This document shows, in pieces, positions 1-63,063 of a DNA stretch of 64,000 nt (positions are counted from its first letter, which is position 1; each line of letters opens with the position of its first letter). The translations under genes and the position numbers were made by a program. The stretch spans positions 1-64,000 of the IMG/VR virus record IMGVR_UViG_3300050014_000823; one strand, written 5' to 3'. The notes beneath the pieces were generated by a model. The model saw only the letters and a program-made list of their open reading frames with translations. It searched no databases and was not told the origin of the DNA.

Positions 1-5
1 CACGA

Positions 6-326
6 TTGAGTAAAAGTATTCGTGCTTCGATTGGTACTTGGAATTGGAAGTATTGGTTAAAGAGACTTGAAATGCAGTGTGAATTAAACCGTGTTTCGTT
101 CAGAACTGTTAGTCCTTATTATACCAGTACGACCTGTCCAGCATGTGGTCATTCCAATCGGGGGAACCGAAATGGAGAGAAGTTCTTATGTCAGAATTGT
201 GGTCACGCTGACAACGCAGATGTTAATGCAGGTAAGAACATTTTGAATCGGTTTCTCACGGGACAATACGGTGCTCGTTACAAACAGGAAAATCAAGAGA
301 ATTTAGTTGTTACTAATTTTTTGTAG
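6..326 (+). mobile_element. tnpB: 3' end of TnpB-like (IS200/IS605 or IS607) RNA-guided nuclease gene, truncated by window edge
   Basis: SPYYTSTTCPACGH..NRNGEKFLCQNCGHADNADVNAGKNIL = zinc ribbon plus RuvC-III typical of TnpB C-termini; ends in TAG. Confidence 0.85.
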
Positions 327-1379: not shown

Positions 1380-1452
1380 GCTTCCGTGACTGAATGGTTA
1401 AGGTGTCAGACTCTAAATCTGATTTGTGCAGGTTCGATTCCTGTCGGAAGTA
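1380..1452 (+). tRNA. amber suppressor tRNA, anticodon CTA (1413-1415)
   Basis: acceptor GCTTCCG/CGGAAGT, D loop with GG, anticodon stem TCAGA/TCTGA with loop CTCTAAA, T arm GCAGG-TTCGATT-CCTGT, discriminator A; no encoded CCA. Confidence 0.92.
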
Positions 1453-1473
1453 CAAAAATAATTGATAATTTGC

Positions 1474-4577: not shown

Positions 4578-5489
4578 ATGGCAAAAAAAGAGAACGATTT
4601 AGTAAAAGAAGTATTAATGGAAAATCAAGAAAAAAAGGAAAAAGAAAAGGACTACAGTGCTGTTACAGGCAAGGGTGGTGGCTTACGCTTTAACAAAGGT
4701 AAACTGAGATACGACTTGGTTGAACCACGAGCATTTGAAGACTTCGTTCAGGTGCTTACCGATGGTGCAAACAAGTACTTCGACAGAAACTGGGAACGTG
4801 GTTTATCATGGACCTCAGTTCTGGCTTCACTTAAAAGGCACTTGGCTGCCATTGAAAAAGGTGAAGACTATGATAAGGAAAGTGGTCGCTTACATATTGC
4901 TCACGCAGCTTGTAACGTACATTTTCTCAATGCATTCTACTATAGCTTTCCACAGGGTGACGACAGACCTAAAAGGTTCTTAAACATCCCTAAAATCGGT
5001 CTGGACATTGATGGAGTGCTCGCTGATTGGACAGGTGGATGGGCAAAAATTTATCCCGAAGTTTCAGCAACACCATATTCTTGGTATTTTGACAGAGTTG
5101 TTGGTAAGCGTTTCAAAGCAATGGAAGCTGCAGGAACTCTCGATGAATTCTATATGAATCTTGAACCTCTGATGCAAGCAAAAGACTTAACTTTCGAGCC
5201 ACACTGCTATATTACATCACGTCCTGTTTCACAAGAAATCTCAGAACAATGGTTGGATAAACACGGATTTCCGTCAAGACATGTTCACAGTATTCAGATG
5301 GGTGAAAGTAAAGTGGATGTAGCCAAAGCTGCAGGTGTTGAAATATTTATTGACGATTCATACGAAAATTTTGTTGCCTTAAACAACGCAGGTATATGTA
5401 CATACCTGTACACAGCATCTTGGAATACCAAACATGATGTTGGTCATCTTAGGCTTAACTCGCTGAATGACTTGCCGTTGCTGAAGTAA
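4578..5489 (+). CDS. dATP/dGTP diphosphohydrolase (DUF5664-like) fused to HAD 5'-nucleotidase (NT5C-like)
   Basis: GKLRYDLV..GANKY..RNWERG..SLKRHL...D.ESG.LHIAHAACN plus IGLDIDGVLAD..ITSRP..FIDD. Confidence 0.85.
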   Translation: MAKKENDLVKEVLMENQEKKEKEKDYSAVTGKGGGLRFNKGKLRYDLVEPRAFEDFVQVLTDGANKYFDRNWERGLSWTSVLASLKRHLAAIEKGEDYDKESGRLHIAHAACNVHFLNAFYYSFPQGDDRPKRFLNIPKIGLDIDGVLADWTGGWAKIYPEVSATPYSWYFDRVVGKRFKAMEAAGTLDEFYMNLEPLMQAKDLTFEPHCYITSRPVSQEISEQWLDKHGFPSRHVHSIQMGESKVDVAKAAGVEIFIDDSYENFVALNNAGICTYLYTASWNTKHDVGHLRLNSLNDLPLLK

Positions 5490-10834: not shown

Positions 10835-11899
10835 ATGGACAATATAAAATTCGACTATAACAACATACTTATTGTGCCAGAGGTAAATACAGATATAGAA
10901 AGCAGATATAAAGACATAGTTCTTCCGAACATGTTACCGCTTTTTACTGCCCCAATGGACACTGTTGTTGATTTAAGCAACATGAGATATTTTTTGGCAA
11001 ACGGTATTAATGTTACTTTACCGAGAACAATTACATATGATTCGTTTCTCGAAAACACTAAAGTAAACACATCAATATTTACCCAAAACCTATTCATTAG
11101 CTTGGGTTTACAGGATATGGAGAAGCACTATAAGACTAACTTCAAAGTATTCCATAGGGATGCACATATTCTCATAGATGTAGCCAACGGTCACATGCAA
11201 AAGATTGTGGATATTGCAAGAGAAGTACGTAGACTTAGACCAGACATAAAATTAATGGTTGGTAATATTGCTAATCCCGAAGCATATGCTTGGTACGCAA
11301 AAAACCATTGTGTTGACTTTATCCGTGTGGGTATCGGTAACGGCAATGGCTGTCTCACTACCAAACAATCGGGAGTCGGATATCCGGGAGCATCACTCAT
11401 TCAAGAAACCTATAAGGTAAAGCAAGATTTTATAAAAAATAATGTTGCTGGTAAAGTTCCTGCAATTGTTGCCGATGGTGGAATGAAAGATTATGTCGAT
11501 GTAATTAAAGCATTGGCATTGGGTGCTGATTATGTCATGATTGGCTCAATCTTCAACAAAGCATTCGAAAGTTGCGCAAAGAATTATGTGTTTTATATTC
11601 CGGTAAACGATAAGATTGCCAACTATTGTTTTGACCATAAAATACCTGTCATGAAACATTTCCGTGGCATGAGTACCAAGGAAGCACAAAAAGCTATGGG
11701 AAAGACCAGTTTTAAGACTTCTGAGGGCGTTACGAGATACAGGAAGGTAGAATATCGCCTACAAGGTTGGGTTGAAAATTTCGAGCATTACTTGCGAAAT
11801 GCAATGAGTTATGCTAATGCCCGGACATTAGAGGATTTTATTGGCAAAGCAGATGTTTGCCAAATTACAAAAGCAGCATATGATAGATTTAACAAATAG
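10835..11899 (+). CDS. guaC: GMP reductase / IMPDH-family protein
   Basis: TAPMDTV, IDVANGH, VGIGNGNGCLT, ADGG, ALGADYVMIG, FRGMST, SEG motifs. Confidence 0.85.
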   Translation: MDNIKFDYNNILIVPEVNTDIESRYKDIVLPNMLPLFTAPMDTVVDLSNMRYFLANGINVTLPRTITYDSFLENTKVNTSIFTQNLFISLGLQDMEKHYKTNFKVFHRDAHILIDVANGHMQKIVDIAREVRRLRPDIKLMVGNIANPEAYAWYAKNHCVDFIRVGIGNGNGCLTTKQSGVGYPGASLIQETYKVKQDFIKNNVAGKVPAIVADGGMKDYVDVIKALALGADYVMIGSIFNKAFESCAKNYVFYIPVNDKIANYCFDHKIPVMKHFRGMSTKEAQKAMGKTSFKTSEGVTRYRKVEYRLQGWVENFEHYLRNAMSYANARTLEDFIGKADVCQITKAAYDRFNK

Positions 11900-28085: not shown

Positions 28086-29351
28086 ATGAACTTAGAGTTG
28101 AACAGAAGGTTGCACGAACTATACGACAAAAAGAATAAGCTATACTACCACGGCAGAGAACAGGGTAAAAGACCCTATACTGGCACATACATATTTATAA
28201 CAGATAATATGGGTTATGCTGCAGGGTACTCAGATGGCGATAAACTCTATACCTATACTGTTCCCTTTGGAGAAGATAAGATTTTCAGTATTAAGAACAA
28301 GAAAGACTTATTAGTTTTGCAACAATATGTGAATAATGAAACAATCAACGCTGTTTTACGTGACAGTGGTGCTGGACAAGAAATGGATTGGGCTGCCTTG
28401 TCATATATCAGTACCGATGATTACGAAATGCCAGAAGAATTATTTCAACACGCAGGTTACTTAGCTATAAGACTAAAAGAACGTCAGGGCATAGATAGTC
28501 TATATGTTTTTGACGAAAATGACCTGGACTTTAAAGGTGAGATTGACATCAGTACTCCCGAAAATATAAAGAAGATAGGGGACTTCTACAGGGAATTTAC
28601 AAAAGATAAGAACTTCCTGCAAGAAAGAATTATAAAGGAATTAACACTGTTGGTCGAAGGACAACATGGTACAATAGACAATGGTAACGAACAAGGCAGT
28701 ATTGATAATGGCAATGAAAATGGACATGTAGTTGCAGATGGAGTAGCTGATAAAGCTGCAGAGAAATTATTCAATATACCCGACCCAAATACCGCTATGA
28801 ATAGACAAGCAACATCTGCTATGGGTCAGCAACAAGCAAAAACTCCGAGTCCAAGCGACCCCAAAGGAACACTCGTTGGATTTATAGAAGACAGGTTTAG
28901 TTCACCAATTGGTGGCAATAAGAAAATACCCGGCACAAACATCTATCTTAACCCCAAAAGTTTAGATGAGTTTGAAGCCGATGTTAAAGCCGTCAGCAAT
29001 GACGTAGGCGATATGTTCGTCTCACAGGCAGACGCTGATATCTATCACTCAGATATAGTCAACGCAGTGGATAAACAAGATGTGTATAGGGGTTATATTG
29101 GCAATGCTTATGATGGTCAGGACACTATAACCTGGCATAGAATAAATAAGTCCGATGACTTTGGCTTTAGTGTAAGTTATTTGGACTTTAATAAGAATCC
29201 AGAGAACCACGCACAACGAGATAAACTCATGCAGATAGTCAAACAAAAGAATCCACGTTATAACTTCCTGCCTTTTTATTGGAGAGAGGAATGGAACAGG
29301 AGATACGACAGTGAGAATGACATGAACAACGACAGTTTACAAAATTACTAA
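28086..29351 (+). CDS. two-module protein: ADP-ribosyltransferase-like N-terminus plus domain shared with 13389 protein
   Basis: LYYHG...IFITDN.GYAAGY pattern; internal IIKE; GTATTTAT at 28060. Confidence 0.55.
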   Translation: MNLELNRRLHELYDKKNKLYYHGREQGKRPYTGTYIFITDNMGYAAGYSDGDKLYTYTVPFGEDKIFSIKNKKDLLVLQQYVNNETINAVLRDSGAGQEMDWAALSYISTDDYEMPEELFQHAGYLAIRLKERQGIDSLYVFDENDLDFKGEIDISTPENIKKIGDFYREFTKDKNFLQERIIKELTLLVEGQHGTIDNGNEQGSIDNGNENGHVVADGVADKAAEKLFNIPDPNTAMNRQATSAMGQQQAKTPSPSDPKGTLVGFIEDRFSSPIGGNKKIPGTNIYLNPKSLDEFEADVKAVSNDVGDMFVSQADADIYHSDIVNAVDKQDVYRGYIGNAYDGQDTITWHRINKSDDFGFSVSYLDFNKNPENHAQRDKLMQIVKQKNPRYNFLPFYWREEWNRRYDSENDMNNDSLQNY

Positions 29352-29374
29352 ACAATATTCTAATTCAGTGCTAA

Positions 29375-29818
29375 ATGAATCTCAAGGGTCTTATAAAGGA
29401 AGAAATCAGCGCATATAATAATAGCGTATTCACGGACCTGCCCTTGGAATTATTTCAGAAACTCCGTATGCGAAAGTTCAGTGATGAGGCAAACCGCAGT
29501 CATATGAAACTCTATAAGGCAAAGGATGGCAAAGACTATATTATTTCTAAAGAGATTAATCGTGATGTATTCCGAGTTAGTACTCTTGACGGTGAACAAA
29601 TAGCAGTAGCAGTGTTTGATGACGATAACGCTGGTTATTTCACTGGCTATGAAACATCCCAGAGTATTATGGTACAGCCTGAGTATAGACGTTTAGGACT
29701 TGCTACTGCACTGACGGACTTCGCTGAGACAATCTACGGTAAACCCTACAGACCAACTAAGGTTCTGAGTGAACCTATGCAGGGATTCGTAAAGAATAGG
29801 TTCAATACGACTTCATAA
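29375..29818 (+). CDS. GNAT acetyltransferase-like protein with LIKEE N-terminus
   Basis: VQPEYRRLGLATAL acetyl-CoA binding motif A. Confidence 0.7.
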   Translation: MNLKGLIKEEISAYNNSVFTDLPLELFQKLRMRKFSDEANRSHMKLYKAKDGKDYIISKEINRDVFRVSTLDGEQIAVAVFDDDNAGYFTGYETSQSIMVQPEYRRLGLATALTDFAETIYGKPYRPTKVLSEPMQGFVKNRFNTTS

Positions 29819-29963
29819 TTGTTTTTGCGGACACCTTGTTTTCAGATTTCCAAATTTTTTCTATAAAATTTTTACCCTTTTAAACATTTTGTAACTACCT
29901 GATAATCAGGAAATCCTAAAAATTTTCTGGAATTTTTTTACTATACCGAACTTTGTCGTGTAG

Positions 29964-30030
29964 CACCCCCACCCCCTAAAACGGGGGGTCCGGGGGGGGT
30001 CTGACGGGGGGGGATACGGGGGGAGGGTGG
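29964..30030 (+). repeat. C-tract/G-tract cluster with G-quadruplex potential
   Basis: C5, C5 then G6, G8, G8, G6, G3 in a long intergenic region. Confidence 0.85.
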
Positions 30031-30035
30031 TAGTG

Positions 30036-30053
30036 TAGAATGATTCTAAATAA
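30036..30053. promoter_or_regulatory. Fur-box-like palindrome TAGAATGATTCTAAATAA
   Basis: related copies at 30822, 38050, 42441. Confidence 0.5.
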
Positions 30054-30083
30054 CAGAGGGTGTGTCGTTTGGCACACCCTCTG
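30054..30083. terminator. strong hairpin downstream of the minus-strand gene 30101-30622
   Basis: CAGAGGGTGTGTC-GTTT-GGCACACCCTCTG. Confidence 0.6.
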
Positions 30084-30100
30084 ACTGACTAAGGTTGTAG

Positions 30101-30622
30101 TTAGATAACTACGTAAGTAGTTTTGCGGAATTTCAGCCTCTTAACGTTGTCGATACTTATTTCCCTGTGGTAAATTGCTGTTTCAGTACCCTGATATTTT
30201 GCGGGGTCACTTGCAGGAAAATACTGTTTAATGACTGCTGAAGGAATGAAGTTTAACGCACTGTCAAAATGTAACGCTCTGAAGGTCTGCTGTGCCTTGT
30301 AGGTAAGGTAAAACGTTCCTTTGGTTACATGTGTACTCAAGGCAGTTGAGAGGCGTTTTCCTGCACCTTTCCATAATGGCTGACTGACAAATTCACGTTC
30401 TTTATTTTCACGTTCTAACTGATTGTTAACGCTATTTTCGTAAACATATCCAACCATACCGCCAACGTTTGCAATTTTGGTAACGTTGCCAAATTTTGCT
30501 TTGCCCTCTGCTGTCAGTTTAGGTTCTGTTACATACTGTAAGCTAACAGGCTGTGCGCCAAAATTCCAATTTCTTAACATTTCGATTAATTCTGCTTTGG
30601 TGATGTTTTTCTGATTTTTCAT
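30101..30622 (-). CDS. hypothetical protein
   Basis: 173 aa; minus-strand TGAAAC-N17-CGTATAA promoter at 30671-30700. Confidence 0.75.
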   Translation of the reverse strand: MKNQKNITKAELIEMLRNWNFGAQPVSLQYVTEPKLTAEGKAKFGNVTKIANVGGMVGYVYENSVNNQLERENKEREFVSQPLWKGAGKRLSTALSTHVTKGTFYLTYKAQQTFRALHFDSALNFIPSAVIKQYFPASDPAKYQGTETAIYHREISIDNVKRLKFRKTTYVVI

Positions 30623-30928
30623 GTCTTAATTTTTTTGGTTTATACTATGTCTGTTTGTGTCGTCTGATTCTTATACGTTGAAAAGTTACAAAATGTTTCA
30701 TTTTTTTCATTTATTTTTCATTTATTTTCACTTTTATTCACAACCTGGCACCAGGTGGGCGTTTGCGGTGATGGCATTCGTACATTGTTTTCCTTATATA
30801 TATAGGTGTGCTGATAGCTTGTTTAGAATCTGTCTAAATTGAGGGTAAAGTGTAACATTTTTTTTTATATCTCGTTAAAGGTAGTATATTTGACAACTGA
30901 ATTGAATGTTTAACTAATACATAAAGCT

Positions 30929-31495
30929 ATGAATGAAGTAACCAACAGAGCAACAGAATTAGAATTTAATGCAATTTATAAAGAGTTCAAACCGGCAATA
31001 GTTGCGCATTTGCGGACAAAAATCAAAAACGAGGAAGAGCGTGATGATATTGAAATGAGAGTATGGGGCAAACTTAATGAAAACCTACATACACACAATA
31101 TTGCCAAAGGTAAACTTAACACGTGGTTATTCACAATCGTAAAAAACGAAATCATTGATTACTTTCGTAGTGACAGGTATAAGAAACACGAAGCAATGAC
31201 AACCAAAGTGTCTGCAATGGTCAACGAAGAGGGTGTTGAGGCGTTTCAGTTTATCGGTGACAATACGGCAAGTACTGAAATCGAAAACAATCAGTTATCC
31301 GATAAAATACTCAACGCATTTGAAAAAATCAAACCTACCTACAAAGATATAGCAATACAGTATTTTCTTTATGAGAAGCAATACACTGAAATTGCGGATG
31401 CAATGTCCATACCATTAGGCACTGTAAAAGTGGCAATCATGAGAGCAAGAGAAGTACTGCAAAACAATCTTAAAGTCGAGTACGCAAGTTTATAA
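30929..31495 (+). CDS. ECF (group 4) RNA polymerase sigma factor
   Basis: region 2 TWLFTIVKNEIIDYFR and region 4 YTEIADAMSIPLGTVKVAIMRAREVL. Confidence 0.92.
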   Translation: MNEVTNRATELEFNAIYKEFKPAIVAHLRTKIKNEEERDDIEMRVWGKLNENLHTHNIAKGKLNTWLFTIVKNEIIDYFRSDRYKKHEAMTTKVSAMVNEEGVEAFQFIGDNTASTEIENNQLSDKILNAFEKIKPTYKDIAIQYFLYEKQYTEIADAMSIPLGTVKVAIMRAREVLQNNLKVEYASL

Positions 31496-31599
31496 TGTAC
31501 TCAAAAGCACTTAGGGCAATGTACAAAAATATATTGTCCTAAGTGTAACAAAAACCAGGAATTTACGTATAATCAATAGTAACCAAAACATATAAAGCT

Positions 31600-32238: not shown

Positions 32239-32314
32239 CAAATATATTGTACAATAAGTGAAACATTTCTGTTGATTGTACGTATAATACTATGTAACCA
32301 AAACATATAAAGCT

Positions 32315-32656
32315 ATGGCAATGAAAATTTTCACACAGGTAATTATCAATGCTTTTAAAAAGCAGGGTAAGACAGGCAACAAATCAATGAAGGATATTTT
32401 TATCATCTGCAAACTGTTTAACCCCGGCGGTGCAGGTACATGGTATTTGTACGAACAGGAAGACGAGGACACGTTTTGGGCATTCGTGAACTTAGGTGAC
32501 GTTGTAATGTCCGAGTGTGGCACTGTATCAATGTCCGAGTTAATGTCTTACAGAGGTCCGTTTGGCTTAAAGATTGAACGTGACAAGTTTTTTGAGCCGT
32601 TCTCCATGACCTTAGAGGAAGTTTACAACAAGGTAAAAGCAGGACAGCACGTCTAA
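32315..32656 (+). CDS. DUF2958-like protein
   Basis: KLFNPGGAGTWYL.E...ECGTVSMSEL..RGPFGLKIERDKFF. Confidence 0.8.
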   Translation: MAMKIFTQVIINAFKKQGKTGNKSMKDIFIICKLFNPGGAGTWYLYEQEDEDTFWAFVNLGDVVMSECGTVSMSELMSYRGPFGLKIERDKFFEPFSMTLEEVYNKVKAGQHV

Positions 32657-42351: not shown

Positions 42352-42385
42352 ATCTTGAAACCTTTTCCCAGATTGTACGTATAAT

Positions 42386-42875
42386 CATTTGTACGACTGA
42401 GGTCTGACCGAGTAGACCTTCGAGTGCCTTTCAGTCCGAACTTAGAATCATTCTAAACAAGCATGGTCATTGTCATGGACAGATTGTCCATGAGGAATGT
42501 CCACAGCCATTGTACGGAACAAACCTCTGCCATTGTACGGAATAGACTAAGGATTGTACAACATAATAAACTACAGATTGTACGGGTACAAGTACCCCCG
42601 AATGTCCGAATTATAAAAAACTATAAAAATCGTTTTGGCAAAAAAATATATTGGCTCGAAGTCGCACGTGTGGGGCATACAAAACCCCCACAATTCCCCA
42701 CTTTACCCCCTTTAGGATTAAGGTCTTATAGTTGTCAGTGTGTAAGTGCTTGATTATCAATGATAGCATTTTGATATCAACTTAGTACAAAACCATACAA
42801 ATACTGTAATTATAGTACAGTTAAAACGGCATTAGTTATATTGTTTGTACAACAGTGAAAATAACTATGATTTTC
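42386..42875. repeat. non-coding region with direct repeats and hairpins
   Basis: GCCATTGTACGGAA x2 (42506, 42529), further ATTGTAC, CATGGACA/TGTCCATG hairpin, C tracts. Confidence 0.7.
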
Positions 42876-42951
42876 TGTAACATTTCTCCCTGTATTACGT
42901 ATAATCACACACAGACAGCGTAAGTAGTACTAACCAATACACATAAGCAAT

Positions 42952-49069: not shown

Positions 49070-49235
49070 ATGTAAATCGTATTATGATTTTACATATATT
49101 TGTATTCGGATTTACTAACAATTAAATCTACGCCTATGATTAAGAGATAACCATTGCCCGTCCGTTAGCATTATGATAATGTCCACAGGACCTAATCATA
49201 CAAAAATAATTATTGAACCCATATAATAAACATAC

Positions 49236-58300: not shown

Positions 58301-60653
58301 TAACAACTTCTTCTGCAGTCATTTTGTTTCTTGAAAGCCAACTCAGACTGAAATAGTACTTGCTTCGTTCAGCCAATATAACTTCTAATGCTTTAATGGT
58401 ATCTGGATGTTGTGGTACTAATCCTGTTTGTCTGCATGCCTTTTTAATCAGTGCTTGATATGCTTTGGTATTATCTGACCTTTTGGCTTTCTGACCTGCC
58501 TTCTGTGCTTCTGAGAGCAACACATTATAATGTCTATCTGAGCGTACTTCGTCTTCATTGAGTCCTGTTTCTGACATTATCTTGCGTAATAGTGCAGCTT
58601 CATTCTTGTTAGGATAATGCTTAGTAGGGTCATTGGCAATCTTCTTTGCCTTACGTTCAGTCGTGTATGTTCTGCTTTCTTGGCAGTCATCATCATAGTC
58701 ATAATAATAACTCATTGTCTTAAATTTTTTCTTTGTTTTCCATATACCACATCATAAACTCTGCTACCGCAATCCACGCTAATTCAATTGGCTTATACTC
58801 CATAGACTCATCATTGACGTAAGTGTTGATATTCATAGAATCTGAGATAAGTCTTTCACCCTTATATTCTTCTCCAGCACAATTGCCTTGATTGATTGCT
58901 ATATGTACACCACCGCCACCACAAATGGTAACGTTGATAGGAAATCCACTAAAATTTCCTTTTACTTTTATTCTGATTTCAGTTATTTTAACAATAACAG
59001 GCATCAGTGCATCCCAAGACTCGTGAAATTTAAGACTATAGTGATATCTTATAGATTTATCGGATTGATAGTTGTAGGTGTATTTACCGTCAATAAGGTC
59101 TTCGCCTTCGGTCCAGACATCTTCAAACTCCGACACATCATCGCCACAGAAATCAACGTAAGAAACTGACGTAGCCTTATCGAAATGTCGCCATCCAAGG
59201 AACTTTGCAATTTCGGTATTATATAATGCTAATTTTTCTTTATAAAATTTTTCCATAATTATTCAATATGATATTCCCAATCGTTCCACATGCAGAGCAC
59301 ATAATACTTATCAATGTAACGTGCCCAATAACCTTTATGTTTAATCCATACACGGTAGACTACGAGTTTGTGTTCATCGTAATATGGGTCATCCTTATAC
59401 TGTGTCAAGGTAGGGTCATCAAGTATATAATCAATATGAACCTTACGAACTCTCTTAATGCTGTCCGTATGTGGAGTTTTTATATTATATGATTTACCTG
59501 CCTGGATTTCCATAGTGCAAATATAAGTAAATTTTCTACTTTATATGCATTATACGATAATAATGTGAAAATGTTACAGCTTCCCCCCATTTTTTTCATA
59601 GCTTCCCTTAAAAAAAATCTAAGTGTGTGATAATGATAGGATTAAAATTTGGCAGCTCCCCCCCGTTTTCACGGCAGCTCCCCTCCTTTTTTAATTTGTC
59701 ATGCCAGTAATCTGGAATGTAATGACAAGAAGTGCGAAGTCTCTTTTGGATAAACCAAGTTTTTTTCTAAGTTTATTTGAGGTAGTTCTTTCGAAGATAA
59801 ATGAGATAAGTGTGAAGCCACCGAAGCCAAAGATAAGAAAGAATGCCAATGCTTTATCAACTGTCCACATCCAATCGTTGTGACCGAAAGCATTTGCATT
59901 ATAGATGATGCCAAGTACAGCAATTAAAAGTATAAGTGGAAGTATTGCAAATCTTGCAAATGGTACACCATAGAGTTTATGCATACGAGTTATCCAAGGA
60001 AGTCTATAAGCATGTAATTCTTTCTCAATTAGGTCAAGTTGTTCTGTAGTAAAATCGAGTTCTGTTCCCGATATATGTACTGTTGCTCTACTGCTTTCCA
60101 TTGTTATCATATGATAGTTGTTTGCTATAAATACTTATGTTTGCAAACCAAACCAAATACCCTTTGGTTTTAACGTAGGTCTGATAGCTTCCAAAATTTT
60201 AACTTCAAACCTATTATCACCCGAATTTGGTGTCTCGGTAATTTCGTCAAAAGACCAACCGCAGCAATCTGTTGGCTTTGAAAGACATACATAGGTATTA
60301 CCATCAAATGTGAATTTCCTTACAGTGTCTCGGAGTAGTCCAATGGGATAGTTAGCTTTTCTCCAATCCTGAAAGTCTTTCGTACTACTGGCAACGACAC
60401 CAACTATCTTACCCTTTGGCTTTCTGTCATCCATGAGTTCTGTAATGACCAAATTGACAGCATTGAGACAATCAACATTCCAAATGGTGCTGTGATTCGG
60501 ATAAAAGCAATACTGTCGCCATCCCGGATACCATTTGATTTCACCAATAACTTCGTCATGATGAATATTTATAATGAAAATTGTCTTGGTTTTACCTGTG
60601 TCTTTGACCACATCAAACCTCAAATACTTTGTTGTTTTTAATGTTGTTGCCAT
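52372..60653 (-). other. run of about 25 short hypothetical CDS, including two lipoprotein-like (52372-52701, 54321-54644) and membrane proteins
   Basis: coupled ORFs; lipobox-like MASC and LNSC; promoter 59549-59578. Confidence 0.7.
57367..58260 (-). CDS. membrane protein with LemA-like C-terminal domain
   Basis: three TM segments, then YQQKV...WK..Q...R..YF.......NN.ML.TFPNNI. Confidence 0.5.
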   Translation of the reverse strand: MKNFKITRPMVVIVLILLGIALTFLNFWMFSETQIFNDTFVKDSYHSYVSYGWIHMALNALLVIFDIVYLIYAIWEFSNDSPPFKFLYDRDNYQYRSTHRDEDEKEPATKKPIRWKRWIWLAIALIVVVNITKFGKTIYKQSVFMYNTSKKYQNTYQQKVEEKLGFYDKLWKTYQTKAQIANMNKDVFIEVTKIIMANVADGENLSWKWISKYPDIDYNQFTAFYADLSNYITKQREGYFSIEKVCQLIANQNNTMLDTFPNNIYNRALKLPKIKFEYGFLSDSTNNVFRTKVENLK

Positions 60654-61234
60654 TTTAATCTTCTGTTAATTTCATAAGTAAGATATGCAGTTCCACTTCC
60701 GATTAATGCTCCTGCGAGTACATCTGTAGGATAATGCACACCTAAGTCCATTCGGGAATATGCAACAGTACCTGCGTAGAAATAAGCTGGTGCAATGACA
60801 TACCATTTAGGATATTGTAAACTCAATGATGTTGCTAACATAAAGGAAGTTGAAGTGTGTCCCGAAGGAAAAGACGGGTCATTACACAGACTTCCAGATT
60901 TGTTTACAATGATGCCGGGATATGTGGTAAATGGACGTTTGCGCTTAACTAAGTATTTTAATCCTGCAGTAATACCTAAGTTAATAATTGTTCCTGTTGC
61001 CAATACACCTGCATTCCGTAATAGTTTATCATCATGATTTGCAAGTCCGAAAATTGCCATACCAACTGGTACACCTGTAATCACATACATATCAGAGTTA
61101 GACATAAACCTGTAAAACCCATCAGAAGGTTGTACTTGTGGTGAGTTGATTGAATGAAGTATACGAAAGTCTATATTCTGACTAAATAATGAAATTGGTA
61201 GAAAAAGTAATAATAGTAGAATAAGATTTTTCAC
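60638..61234 (-). CDS. PAP2-family phosphatase
   Basis: K.LVKRKRP, SFPSGH, SRMDLGVHYPTDV. Confidence 0.92.
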   Translation of the reverse strand: MKNLILLLLLFLPISLFSQNIDFRILHSINSPQVQPSDGFYRFMSNSDMYVITGVPVGMAIFGLANHDDKLLRNAGVLATGTIINLGITAGLKYLVKRKRPFTTYPGIIVNKSGSLCNDPSFPSGHTSTSFMLATSLSLQYPKWYVIAPAYFYAGTVAYSRMDLGVHYPTDVLAGALIGSGTAYLTYEINRRLKWQQH

Positions 61235-63063
61235 AACATATCTATTTTGTTAATTGTTTCGAATATTACTTGTGCGACTTGCGGGACGATTGCGTTTCCA
61301 AGTGCGGTATTTCTACCAGCGTCCAATTTTCGGGATATCCCATTAAATACTCCGTGAATTCGGGATATTGCTTCATACCAATGAAGTCCAAAAGGGTCTC
61401 CAGATAGCTGAGTGCTATGTTGTGTCCCTTCCTCTTGGCTCTTGTCGGGTACTTCTCCCAACTGCCTTCCCGTGGTGTCGGAATTAAGTTCCACTTTGGC
61501 ACGTCCGATAATCCAAACCCTCTCTCGAATGTGGTATGCTCCGACTGCACAAGCCGGCAAACCAATCGTGAGTGTTTCGTAACCTTCAGTTTCCAATTGA
61601 AGCATAATCTGTTCGTAGGCATTACCATCGTCTGTTGTAAGGAGTCCAGAAACATTCTCTGCCACAAACCATCGGGGTTTGCATTCCCGTATAACTCTGA
61701 TATAATCGTCCCAGAGATATCTTTTGTCTTCTTTGCCGAGCATTTTTCCTGCTTTACTGAAAGGTTGGCAGTTGTGGACTGCAAGTCCGTTTGCTGTATA
61801 GGTGTTGTCATCTTCAATCTCTAAATTATATACCGTCTCATTTTTTGAGACTACTGTTATTTTTTTAAACAGACACCACACATAACCATTTTCATAAAAT
61901 CCATAACGTTTAGAATTTTTATGTAGTCTAAGATGATACTGTCTTCTTTCATTTACTGTTCGACCTTCAATTATGCAAATTCTTTTTGGTTTTGCTGTTC
62001 CAAGACTAACAGGTACTTTATATACGTTTCGTGCAACCCTTGTCATATCTAATGCAAGTTGTCTGCTTACTGTTGTTACTGATGTTAATCCGTCCTTTTC
62101 ATAACCATCAGCATCCTGCCAACCATCAAAAACGGCTTTTTGTTTTTCATTTGACAATTCAAACACTAATTGGGTTAAATGCTTTCCATGCGCATACATA
62201 CCAAACTGTATCATAAACTCATATAATTCTTGATTAGTGATATGAAATTTAGTACATGTTCTTTCGACTACCTTTGCCGAACTATAACCAGCATTTACTA
62301 TATATTTTTCAAGGTTATCTGCATCATCATTTGATGTGCAAATTATTACTCGATGATTATACGAATTCTTTCTACTATTTGGTTTATTTTTATCGGGTTT
62401 TCTTTTAGAATTATTAGTCCAACCATCACCAAGATATCGTCCAACCATGTACCAAAACTCAATAGAATGGCTATCGTTGTCGTTTGGTGTGTCGAGAACA
62501 TATCCGACATAATCACCCCTTTTTAAATTTTTTGCTTCGACAAAATATGGGTCAGTAAAAAATCTGTCATAACTTCTTCTTTCACGATTAAATTTATGAT
62601 ATTGACTTCTTACATAAAATGGATGCTCTGCAGTGGTTTCTAATGCATCTGGTAATCCTTGTGCTCTGACACTATAAATTTCATTGGCTTCCCGTTTCAT
62701 TAACGACAAGACTTTCTTATAGTTACCAGTATGTGTTAAAACTGAATCTTCTAATGACACTTCATTTATTTTAACATATCCTCTTTTAGTGGCAACCAAA
62801 GTATTTTCAGTAAAACAGGGGACACCGCCTGTGATGATATCAATTCTGTTTTTCCACTGAGAAAAATCGGTTGTTGTAATGTCTTCATAAGTAATACTGT
62901 TTGGGAAGTGCGCTTTCAGCACCTGTAGGCAGAATGGTTTTATCTCACAATGAAATTCGTTGGACCAACCAACTCTTTCAGCAGCCAAATCAAAGCCGCC
63001 AATACCGCTAAAAAGAGAGCCATGTTTTAACCTATTCTTTAAGTCCAAGTTGTTGTGGGTCAT
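61231..63063 (-). CDS. dcm: C5 DNA cytosine methyltransferase containing an intein
   Basis: SLFSGIGG, GGVP|CQPFS, ENV, RERVWI, LGNAIVPQVA. Confidence 0.92.
   Translation of the reverse strand: MTHNNLDLKNRLKHGSLFSGIGGFDLAAERVGWSNEFHCEIKPFCLQVLKAHFPNSITYEDITTTDFSQWKNRIDIITGGVPCFTENTLVATKRGYVKINEVSLEDSVLTHTGNYKKVLSLMKREANEIYSVRAQGLPDALETTAEHPFYVRSQYHKFNRERRSYDRFFTDPYFVEAKNLKRGDYVGYVLDTPNDNDSHSIEFWYMVGRYLGDGWTNNSKRKPDKNKPNSRKNSYNHRVIICTSNDDADNLEKYIVNAGYSSAKVVERTCTKFHITNQELYEFMIQFGMYAHGKHLTQLVFELSNEKQKAVFDGWQDADGYEKDGLTSVTTVSRQLALDMTRVARNVYKVPVSLGTAKPKRICIIEGRTVNERRQYHLRLHKNSKRYGFYENGYVWCLFKKITVVSKNETVYNLEIEDDNTYTANGLAVHNCQPFSKAGKMLGKEDKRYLWDDYIRVIRECKPRWFVAENVSGLLTTDDGNAYEQIMLQLETEGYETLTIGLPACAVGAYHIRERVWIIGRAKVELNSDTTGRQLGEVPDKSQEEGTQHSTQLSGDPFGLHWYEAISRIHGVFNGISRKLDAGRNTALGNAIVPQVAQVIFETINKIDML
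61266..61817 (-). CDS. alternative-frame ORF nested in dcm, carrying a motif IX-like segment
   Basis: 183 codons open; LIPTP...YPEFTEYLMGYPENWT. Confidence 0.6.
   Translation of the reverse strand: MKMTTPIQQTDLQSTTANLSVKQEKCSAKKTKDISGTIISELYGNANPDGLWQRMFLDSLQQTMVMPTNRLCFNWKLKVTKHSRLVCRLVQSEHTTFERGFGLSDVPKWNLIPTPREGSWEKYPTRAKRKGHNIALSYLETLLDFIGMKQYPEFTEYLMGYPENWTLVEIPHLETQSSRKSHK
61771..62817 (-). mobile_element. intein with LAGLIDADG endonuclease (349 aa)
   Basis: CFTENT...TAEHPF...VGRYLGDG...GWQDADG...VYNLEI..NTYTANGLAVHN|C. Confidence 0.93.

What the first reader, a model, noticed from the sequence alone, without database searches (positions are those of the whole stretch)
29820..30100. 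Extreme G-tract cluster at the boundary between two genome regimes
Seen: CCCCC-A-CCCCC then G6-TCC-G8-TCTGAC-G8-ATAC-G6-A-G3 in an AT-rich genome. It could fold as a multi-tier G-quadruplex or an alternative C/G hairpin. It is followed immediately by a Fur-box-like palindrome and a strong hairpin. GTATTTAT-class genes lie to its left and the dense ECF-promoter region to its right. Inference: a genome terminus, packaging site or replication origin.
Basis: partly seen in the sequence, partly recalled or inferred. Interest (0 to 1): 0.6.

Follow-up and report, generated by a model that had tools for sequence, protein, structure and literature searches.

The report
Conserved G-tract element in jumbo phages
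The G-run cluster is real and is one copy of a conserved, single-copy, about 130-base non-coding element found in many giant phages, most likely a small G-quadruplex-prone RNA gene beside the phage's sigma-factor gene; nothing here shows it is a genome end.

Summary
The only G runs of 6 or more in the whole 299-kb phage record are the four at 29983-30023. A three-tract pattern occurs 0 times in 100 shuffles.

The cluster belongs to a widespread family. I found 73 distinct versions in viral, metagenome and MAG contigs. There is exactly one copy in each of 7 complete 320-360 kb relatives checked. Every version has an invariant TGTAGCACCC box, then 39-40 variable bases holding two to four long G tracts, then GGGGGATAC and usually more G tracts.

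Upstream lies a conserved A/T-tract and promoter-like motif in fixed register. Downstream lie a palindrome and a terminator. In the 14 relatives examined the element sits between converging genes, and in 10 of them an ECF-type sigma gene lies 1-6 kb further on (in the rest the locus held is too short to tell).

Best reading, about 45% confidence: an independently transcribed small RNA that folds as a C-arm hairpin or stem-clamped multi-tier G-quadruplex. Its function is unknown and may be tied to the early-to-middle switch.

The terminus reading is not supported. Two relatives assemble as circles through it, none of 8 complete or near-complete records ends at it, and the GC-skew extremes lie at 49 and 259 kb. 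A pac site or an R-loop origin is not excluded. No raw reads or RNA data were available. Rfam has no match.

The parts
29916..29940 (+). A/T-tract motif (A5 T4 CTGGAA T7), conserved upstream module; UP-element or -35-like region, or a protein-binding bent-DNA site
   Evidence: The logo of 68 family members shows T tracts at -40..-34 and -26..-20 around a purine patch. A weight matrix trained on the other phages ranks this position first in the whole 299-kb genome. The motif is not a general promoter class in this genome.
29947..29953 (+). -10-like element (CGAACTT; family consensus AgAAgTT), 6-12 nt before the invariant box
   Evidence: The spacing would put a start at about 29959-29960. This is inferred, not shown.
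29959..30017 (+). Core element: invariant TGTAGCACCC, a C-rich arm, an A-rich loop, three G tracts, invariant GGGGGATAC; 59 nt
   Evidence: Alignments A2, A5 and A6.
30018..30030 (+). Fourth G tract (G6) plus G3-T-GG, which can pair with CCACCC of the 5' arm
   Evidence: 57 of 70 members have at least one G4+ tract within 45 nt after ATAC.
30036..30048 (.). Palindrome TAGAAT-G-ATTCTA (family form TTTAGA-N5-6-TCTAAA), operator-like
   Evidence: It recurs at 30822-30839 just upstream of the sigma gene's own ECF-type promoter, and at about 38050 and 42443. It is conserved after the G cluster in the ORF173 clade.
30054..30083 (.). Strong hairpin: terminator of the converging ORF173 and probable stop for rightward transcripts
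   Evidence: T-rich tail on the - strand only. Relatives mostly have two-way terminators 95-220 nt from the box, and three have G-strand-only terminators.
30101..30622 (-). ORF173, the conserved converging neighbour, function unknown
   Evidence: 55-92% identical copies lie next to the element in 6 lineages. The model has pLDDT 82 and only weak Sm/Hfq/WYL/YaeO-like matches, Z 5-7.
30929..31495 (+). ECF-type sigma factor gene, with its own TGTAAC-N16-CGTTAA promoter at 30851-30878
   Evidence: Pfam Sigma70_r2 and r4_2, and PHROG 1740. Sigma homologues lie 1-6 kb downstream of the element, on its strand, in 10 relatives.

Best explanation
The cluster is the body of a small, independently transcribed, non-coding RNA gene. 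It is conserved as a single copy in a large family of roughly 300-360 kb phages and in some other mobile elements; hosts are possibly Bacteroidota.

Transcription would start at or next to the invariant TGTAGCA (about 29959-29960). It would be driven by the conserved A/T-tract and -10-like module, helped by read-through from the upstream operon. It would stop at the hairpin at 30054-30083, giving an RNA of about 125-135 nt.

The RNA has a 5' C-rich arm that can pair with one G tract. The remaining four long G tracts can stack into a multi-tier G-quadruplex clamped by a short helix. Hairpin and quadruplex forms compete.

I infer, but have not shown, that this very stable RNA acts in trans early in infection as a decoy or binding platform for a conserved host or phage factor at the early-to-middle switch. 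The reason is its conserved linkage to the phage sigma gene and to that regulon's operator-like palindrome.

Shown: conservation, single-copy status, fixed geometry, tract conservation and flanking signals. Inferred: transcription, fold and function.
For: 1. The G tracts are conserved while the bases between them vary freely. This holds in 73 distinct versions from AT-rich genomes. 54 of 70 have three G4+ tracts in the core and 52 of 70 have at least four overall.

2. In 5 complete relatives the tri-tract pattern occurs only inside the element. The element pattern matches once per genome in 7 complete relatives.

3. The upstream motif is conserved in fixed register to the invariant box. A matrix trained on the other phages ranks the window's site first genome-wide.

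4. A subfamily (L139, L219) instead has a GTATTTATA-type motif 13 nt upstream. That is the same motif that sits 12-20 nt before start codons in this genome, so it suggests a promoter swap at the same start point.

5. G-strand-only intrinsic terminators lie directly after the tracts in L173, L175 and L181. Two-way terminators lie 95-220 nt downstream in most others.

6. With G4 energies, 10 of 14 versions fold with a 4-6-tier quadruplex (5-6 tiers in 8), and in about 9 it is enclosed by a helix from the 5' arm.

7. The element also occurs in an unrelated integrase-bearing island of a Bacteroidales contig that shares no proteins with this phage. That fits a host-directed RNA better than a site read by a phage-specific terminase.

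8. The G strand has the same orientation as the upstream genes in the 14 relatives examined, and as the sigma gene in the 10 where one was found.
Against: There is no expression data: no RNA run holds the region.

No base-pair covariation could be shown. The consensus pairs are invariant. Pair probabilities without G4 are diffuse. Chimera tests show no self-preference for the inner hairpin, and only a small effect for the outer helix, 0.9 kcal/mol with 1 of 2000 permutations.

The window's own -10-like element is weak. The hairpin lacks a U tail on the G strand.

The upstream motif is not used elsewhere in the genome, so it could be a protein-binding site rather than a promoter.

The exact 39-40 nt spacing would also suit a DNA-binding protein. 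Only 2 of 61 members have a terminator between the upstream gene and the element, so it may simply be part of a 3' UTR.

No Rfam family matches.
Confidence: 0.45

Rival explanations
1. It is a packaging (pac) recognition site or terminal-repeat boundary read by the phage terminase. In this reading the A/T tracts and the C/G tracts act like the herpesvirus pac2 and pac1 motifs, with cutting between them.
For: It is single copy per genome. It has fixed-spacing invariant boxes. It lies in a gene-free converging gap.

Herpes pac1 is an A/T-rich core flanked by poly-C, and pac2 is an A-rich tract (PMC10763189).

13 whole metagenome contigs end 2-151 nt upstream of the box, that is in or beside the A/T tracts, against 4 ending within about 110 nt downstream.
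Against: None of 8 complete or near-complete records ends at it, and two assemble as circles through it. Contigs of two runs cross it.

The contig ends are scattered over 150 nt in a homopolymer-rich, fast-evolving stretch where assemblies break for technical reasons; one assembly has Ns there.

The boxes are invariant across phages whose sigma proteins are only 30-48% identical, and they also occur in an island with no shared proteins. That is unusual for terminase sites.

No Terminase_6N gene was detected in the record; other terminase families were not tested.
Confidence: 0.15
2. It is a transcription-primed replication origin. The promoter fires into a G-rich non-template strand, and the G-rich RNA forms a stable R-loop or hybrid quadruplex that primes DNA synthesis. 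From my own knowledge this would resemble mitochondrial CSB II, ColE1 RNA II or T4 oriF/oriG.
For: A promoter-like module reads into G tracts on the non-template strand. The flank is AT-rich and easily melted. It is single copy.
Against: Cumulative GC and AT skew have their minimum at 259 kb and maximum at 49 kb and simply follow gene strand; nothing changes at 30 kb.

The invariant 5' box, fixed length and intrinsic terminators are not needed for an R-loop origin. No replication genes were recognised next to it.
Confidence: 0.15
3. It is a purely DNA-level regulatory or insulating site. A protein, perhaps the neighbouring ORF173 or the factor that binds the nearby palindrome, binds the two boxes and the phased tracts. 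Alternatively the G tracts block read-through between the early operon, the converging ORF173 and the sigma gene.
For: The box spacing is exact. The tracts have a period of roughly 12-13 nt (my reading of the consensus). An operator-like palindrome shared with sigma-dependent promoters lies next to it. The converging context is seen in all 14 relatives examined.
Against: The neighbour protein is not constant. Two families with no detectable similarity occupy that place, and the L219 island has neither.

In the consensus the long G tracts lie on one strand, with only the short C-rich arm opposite them, which is unexpected for duplex recognition. G-strand terminators directly after the tracts imply transcription through them.
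Confidence: 0.12

Closest known systems
Phage-encoded small regulatory and decoy RNAs, including RNA anti-CRISPRs (for example bioRxiv 10.64898/2026.06.03.729762, seen)
   Same: A short stand-alone unit with promoter-like and terminator signals in an intergenic gap. It is single copy and is shared among unrelated mobile elements.
   Different: No known family matches in Rfam 15. The 12-mer of the box never occurs more than once in any of 401 sampled genomes of the MAG's phylum, so there is no sign of CRISPR-repeat mimicry. The body is dominated by G5-G8 tracts, which no described phage sRNA shows.
G-quadruplex/hairpin switch motifs of E. coli (Kaplan et al. 2016, PMC5100583)
   Same: G tracts sit beside a complementary C-rich segment, so hairpin and quadruplex are alternative folds. 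Both are conserved non-coding motifs.
   Different: This element has much longer tracts. It also has invariant flanking boxes with fixed spacing and its own promoter-like module, and it is restricted to phages and mobile elements.
Herpesvirus pac1/pac2 cleavage-packaging signals (PMC10763189)
   Same: An A/T-rich patch flanked by homopolymer C/G tracts, with an A/T tract some tens of bases away. It is a single cis element in viruses of the same terminase lineage (lineage from my own knowledge).
   Different: The herpesvirus motifs lie at genome ends inside terminal repeats. Here the element is internal in every complete assembly. The tract number is higher, and C tracts lie on one side only.
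R-loop origins with G-rich transcripts: mitochondrial CSB II, ColE1 RNA II, T4 oriF/oriG (my own knowledge, not tested here)
   Same: A promoter reads into a G-rich non-template strand next to AT-rich DNA.
   Different: There is no skew change or replication-gene linkage. The invariant boxes and terminators are unexplained by this model.

Membership tests
Canonical intramolecular G-quadruplex motif | Four or more runs of at least 3 G separated by short loops on one strand | tested here: met
   G6, G8, G8, G6 with loops of 3, 6 and 4 nt. 0 of 100 shuffles match. 52 of 70 family members have at least four G4+ tracts.
Canonical intramolecular G-quadruplex motif | Actual quadruplex folding (cation-dependent) | not testable with these tools
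   There is only an energy-model prediction: -70 kcal/mol with G4 terms against -32 without.
Any described RNA family (Rfam 15) | Covariance-model match | tested here: not met
   No hit at E up to 1 on the window region. Across 15 other members the only matches in the element region were sub-threshold Hrs1 hits in two loci (26-27 bits against a gathering score of 56, E 0.25-0.31).
Stand-alone small RNA gene | Promoter in fixed register to a conserved 5' end | tested here: inconclusive
   The motif is conserved in register, and a subfamily has an alternative promoter-type motif. The window's -10-like element is weak, and the motif is unique to this site.
Stand-alone small RNA gene | Terminator on the same strand | tested here: inconclusive
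   G-strand-only terminators in 3 members and two-way ones in most. The window's hairpin has a T-rich tail only on the opposite strand.
Stand-alone small RNA gene | Compensatory base-pair changes | tested here: inconclusive
   0 covarying pairs in the consensus. Chimera tests were negative or weak.
Stand-alone small RNA gene | Detected transcript | not testable with these tools
   No RNA run holds the region.
Physical genome terminus (cos or terminal-repeat end) | Complete assemblies end at the site, or reads start there | tested here: not met
   The element is internal in 8 of 8 complete or near-complete records. Two are circular with 123 and 127-nt overlaps. Read starts could not be examined because only contigs were available.
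Herpesvirus-type pac1/pac2 signal | A/T-rich core flanked by poly-C on both sides, located near the termini | tested here: inconclusive
   The composition is only partly alike: a C tract on one side and a G tract on the other. The location criterion is not met in assemblies.
Replication origin | Strand-composition switch at the site | tested here: not met
   Skew extremes lie at 49,109 and 259,111 and follow gene strand.
CRISPR-repeat mimic (RNA anti-CRISPR) | The box sequence recurs as an array repeat in host genomes | tested here: not met
   At most 1 copy per genome in 401 sampled genomes of the MAG's phylum, at control level. This covers only those searched.

The most novel reading that the evidence does not exclude
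This is the first natural non-coding RNA class defined by a helix-clamped, 4-6-tier RNA G-quadruplex. It would be made early by giant phages and other mobile elements (possibly of Bacteroidota) and would act in trans on a conserved host or phage factor to time the hand-over from host-type transcription to the phage's own ECF-type sigma factor.
Probability: 0.25. Interest if true: 0.8.

Novelty: new variant of a known kind. Interest (0 to 1): 0.62.

Why it matters
Conserved G-quadruplex elements with a defined role are almost unknown in bacteria and phages. Here selection clearly keeps four or five long G tracts in AT-rich genomes, across dozens of diverged giant phages from peat, sludge, sediment and digesters, and always as one copy at the same place.

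If it is an RNA, it is a new and abundant structured-RNA class, and a natural test case for RNA quadruplex function in prokaryotes. If it is a packaging or origin signal, it would give the first cis-acting landmark for this uncultured phage group.

Either way it is a useful marker. One short pattern retrieves these phages from any metagenome.

Tried and rejected
- **Phage database.** Megablast of 28500-31500 against phage records found nothing.
- **Rfam.** The window region, a look-alike locus and 15 relatives gave nothing above threshold.
- **Reads.** Only Logan contigs of four peat runs were available, with no raw reads and no RNA. Read starts, coverage steps and expression could not be seen.
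- **Terminal repeats.** Those of two relatives are 123 and 127 nt, which is assembly overlap and not real ends.
- **GC skew.** It follows gene strand and shows no feature at 30 kb.
- **Covariation.** RNAalifold found none. Pair probabilities were diffuse. The chimera test for the inner hairpin was negative on both strands. The outer helix gave only a small effect that may reflect shared composition.
- **ORF173.** No Pfam, PHROG or PDB sequence match. Foldseek found nothing. VIA-align gave only Sm/Hfq/WYL/YaeO-like matches at Z 5-7, which is within noise. The second neighbour family gave a poor model, pLDDT 53, which I did not use. The two neighbour families are not detectably related.
- **More relatives by protein.** The 421-aa upstream protein and the sigma protein found no loci, and the sigma alignment was too diverged to search with.
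- **Trans targets.** No complement of either box exists elsewhere in the genome. A C5/C4/C5 cluster at 42.7 kb could pair with the G tracts, but it is absent from 5 relatives.
- **CRISPR-repeat mimicry.** No arrays in 401 genomes.
- **Promoter class.** The upstream motif is not reused elsewhere in the genome.
- **Terminase.** Terminase_6N was not detected in the record.

Full report
**What is there**

The window is the first 64 kb of a 299,144-bp IMG/VR virus record. It is linear as assembled, CheckV estimates it 91% complete, and it is 35% GC.

In the whole record the only G runs of six or more are the four at 29983, 29992, 30006 and 30018. A three-tract pattern matches only here in the window and in none of 100 shuffles. 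Contigs from two peat runs cross the region without a single difference, though these may be the source samples.

The cluster lies in a 282-bp gap (29819-30100). On the left is a rightward GNAT-like ORF. On the right is a leftward 173-aa ORF. An ECF-type sigma gene follows at 30929-31495.

**It is a conserved family, not a local oddity**

Relatives found through ORF173 (55-92% identity) carry the same element downstream of that gene.

All share an invariant TGTAGCACCC. Then come exactly 40 bases of variable sequence rich in G tracts, then GGGGGATAC and more G tracts. The family range seen later is 39-40 bases. A pattern search that allowed 11 different spacings found 15 true members in viral contigs, and all had one of two adjacent lengths.

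In total there are 73 distinct versions, from peat, activated sludge, sediments and digesters.

Seven complete 320-360 kb relatives have exactly one copy each. In five complete relatives tested, a generic three-tract pattern occurs nowhere else on either strand.

The consensus has these parts in order:
- the 5' box;
- a C-rich arm;
- an A-rich loop;
- G tract 1, about 5 bases, G tract 2, about 6 bases, G tract 3;
- ATAC;
- G tract 4, and often a fifth.

The bases between tracts vary freely while the tracts persist. 54 of 70 versions have three G4+ tracts in the core, and 52 of 70 have four or more overall. Close relatives even show an indel in the C tract offset by one in a G tract, which keeps the total length.

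**Context**

In the 14 relatives examined the element lies between converging genes. Rightward genes lie upstream. A leftward ORF follows, usually of about 170-200 aa, drawn mainly from two families that are not detectably related. In 10 relatives a sigma homologue lies 1-6 kb further on, on the element's strand.

In this genome two promoter-like motif classes dominate. GTATTTAT(A) sits 12-20 nt before start codons. The ECF-type TGTAAC-N16-CGTATAAT begins at 31544 and fills the next 90 kb. So the 'boundary of two regimes' is the start of the sigma regulon.

The 'Fur-box-like' palindrome is one of four copies of TTTAGA-N5-6-TCTAAA. Another copy sits directly upstream of the sigma gene's own ECF-type promoter. 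The strong hairpin is the terminator of ORF173.

**Signals of transcription**

Upstream of the box, all lineages keep two T tracts around a purine patch, and an AgAAgTT element at -12 to -6, in fixed register. A weight matrix trained only on other phages ranks the window's site first among about 600,000 positions. Even so, the motif is not reused elsewhere in the genome.

A divergent subfamily (L139, L219) instead has a GTATTTATA-like motif 13 nt upstream. That looks like a promoter swap at the same start point.

Three members have classic G-strand-only terminators right after the tracts. Most others have two-way terminators 95-220 nt downstream. Only 2 of 61 members have a terminator between the upstream gene and the element, so read-through would also transcribe it.

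**Fold**

Without quadruplex terms the predicted ensemble is diffuse. The only consensus pairs are invariant ones: UGUA with UACG, and CCCC with GGGG.

With quadruplex terms, 10 of 14 versions fold with a 4-6-tier quadruplex (5-6 tiers in 8), and in about 9 it is enclosed by a helix from the 5' arm. For the window this gives -70 kcal/mol against -32 without.

Statistical tests for compensatory change were negative or weak. The structure therefore rests on tract conservation, not on covariation.

**Terminus, packaging site or origin?**

Two relatives flagged as having terminal repeats have overlaps of only 123 and 127 nt. That means circular assembly through the element. No complete or near-complete record ends at it. 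Cumulative GC skew peaks at 49.1 kb and bottoms at 259.1 kb, exactly where gene strand switches, and shows nothing at 30 kb.

One observation does keep a packaging reading alive. Thirteen whole metagenome contigs end 2-151 nt upstream of the box, in or beside the A/T tracts, against four ending just downstream. Herpesvirus pac1 and pac2 have a similar composition. However, the ends are scattered, and the stretch is homopolymer-rich, fast-evolving and known to trouble assemblers.

The element also occurs 690 nt downstream of a tyrosine integrase, in a 75-kb low-GC island of an 850-kb Bacteroidales contig. That island shares no proteins with this phage. This fits a host-directed RNA better than a terminase-specific site.

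**Verdict**

The most likely identity is a small, G-quadruplex-prone non-coding RNA gene of a new family (about 45%). A pac site (15%), an R-loop origin (15%) and a DNA-level protein site or insulator (12%) remain as rivals. Function is unknown.

Its fixed linkage to the phage sigma gene and to that regulon's operator suggests a role at the early-to-middle switch. This last step is inference only.

Noticed in passing
window 1380-1453: A tRNA gene with anticodon CTA (an amber suppressor; ARAGORN labels it Pyl). Standard-code ORFs still cover 89% of the genome, so any TAG recoding would be partial or late.
   Followed up: partly
window 30036-30048, 30822-30839, about 38050 and 42443: The palindrome TTTAGA-N5-6-TCTAAA recurs four times. 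Two copies sit directly upstream of the -35 TGTAAC of ECF-type promoters, including the sigma gene's own. It is probably the operator of a regulator of the sigma regulon.
   Followed up: partly
window 42352-42951: A 600-nt non-coding stretch lies after an ECF-type promoter. It holds six ATTGTAC(G/C)-like repeats (iteron-like) and a C5/C4/C5 cluster at 42685-42712. It may be another RNA or an origin-like region. The C cluster is absent from 5 relatives.
   Followed up: partly
window 4578-5489 and 10835-11899: A MazZ-like dATP/dGTP diphosphohydrolase fused to an NT5C nucleotidase, and an IMPDH/GMP-reductase-like protein. Together they hint at reworked purine or dG metabolism, perhaps modified bases.
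   Followed up: no
window 61231-63063 (- strand): A C5 cytosine DNA methylase interrupted by an intein (Hint and intein-splicing domains).
   Followed up: no
window 59550-59700 (- strand): Repeats of GGGG(G)AGCTGCC and GGGAAGCT lie just upstream of an ECF-type promoter. This is a second, smaller G-run group, G6 and G7 on the - strand.
   Followed up: no
window 1-200: The contig starts inside a TnpB-like zinc-ribbon ORF, judged by my reading of the sequence.
   Followed up: no
window 32259-32325: A 67-nt stretch recurs about 4 kb further on in the same contigs, as a repeated promoter-region segment. Such repeats may explain why several related contigs break 0.8-7 kb downstream of the element.
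   Followed up: partly
L117-L136 (for example L120:1220-1420): An unrelated group of about 40-kb phages has a conserved, structured-looking intergenic stretch that also contains TGTAGCACCC followed by G6-TA-G6 and ends in a terminator. There is no Rfam match. The resemblance may be chance, because the search pattern selected for it.
   Followed up: partly
G011:C19:1-75000 (L227-L230): An 850-kb contig of a Bacteroidales MAG begins with a 75-kb low-GC island (0.34 against 0.42). The island carries a divergent copy of the element at 36.2 kb, next to a tyrosine integrase, and shares no proteins with this phage.
   Followed up: partly
L222 (genome contigs): A 362,763-bp contig filed as a 'Candidatus Paceibacterota' MAG has the same length as phage record G003 and carries the element. 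It is probably a phage genome binned as a bacterium.
   Followed up: no
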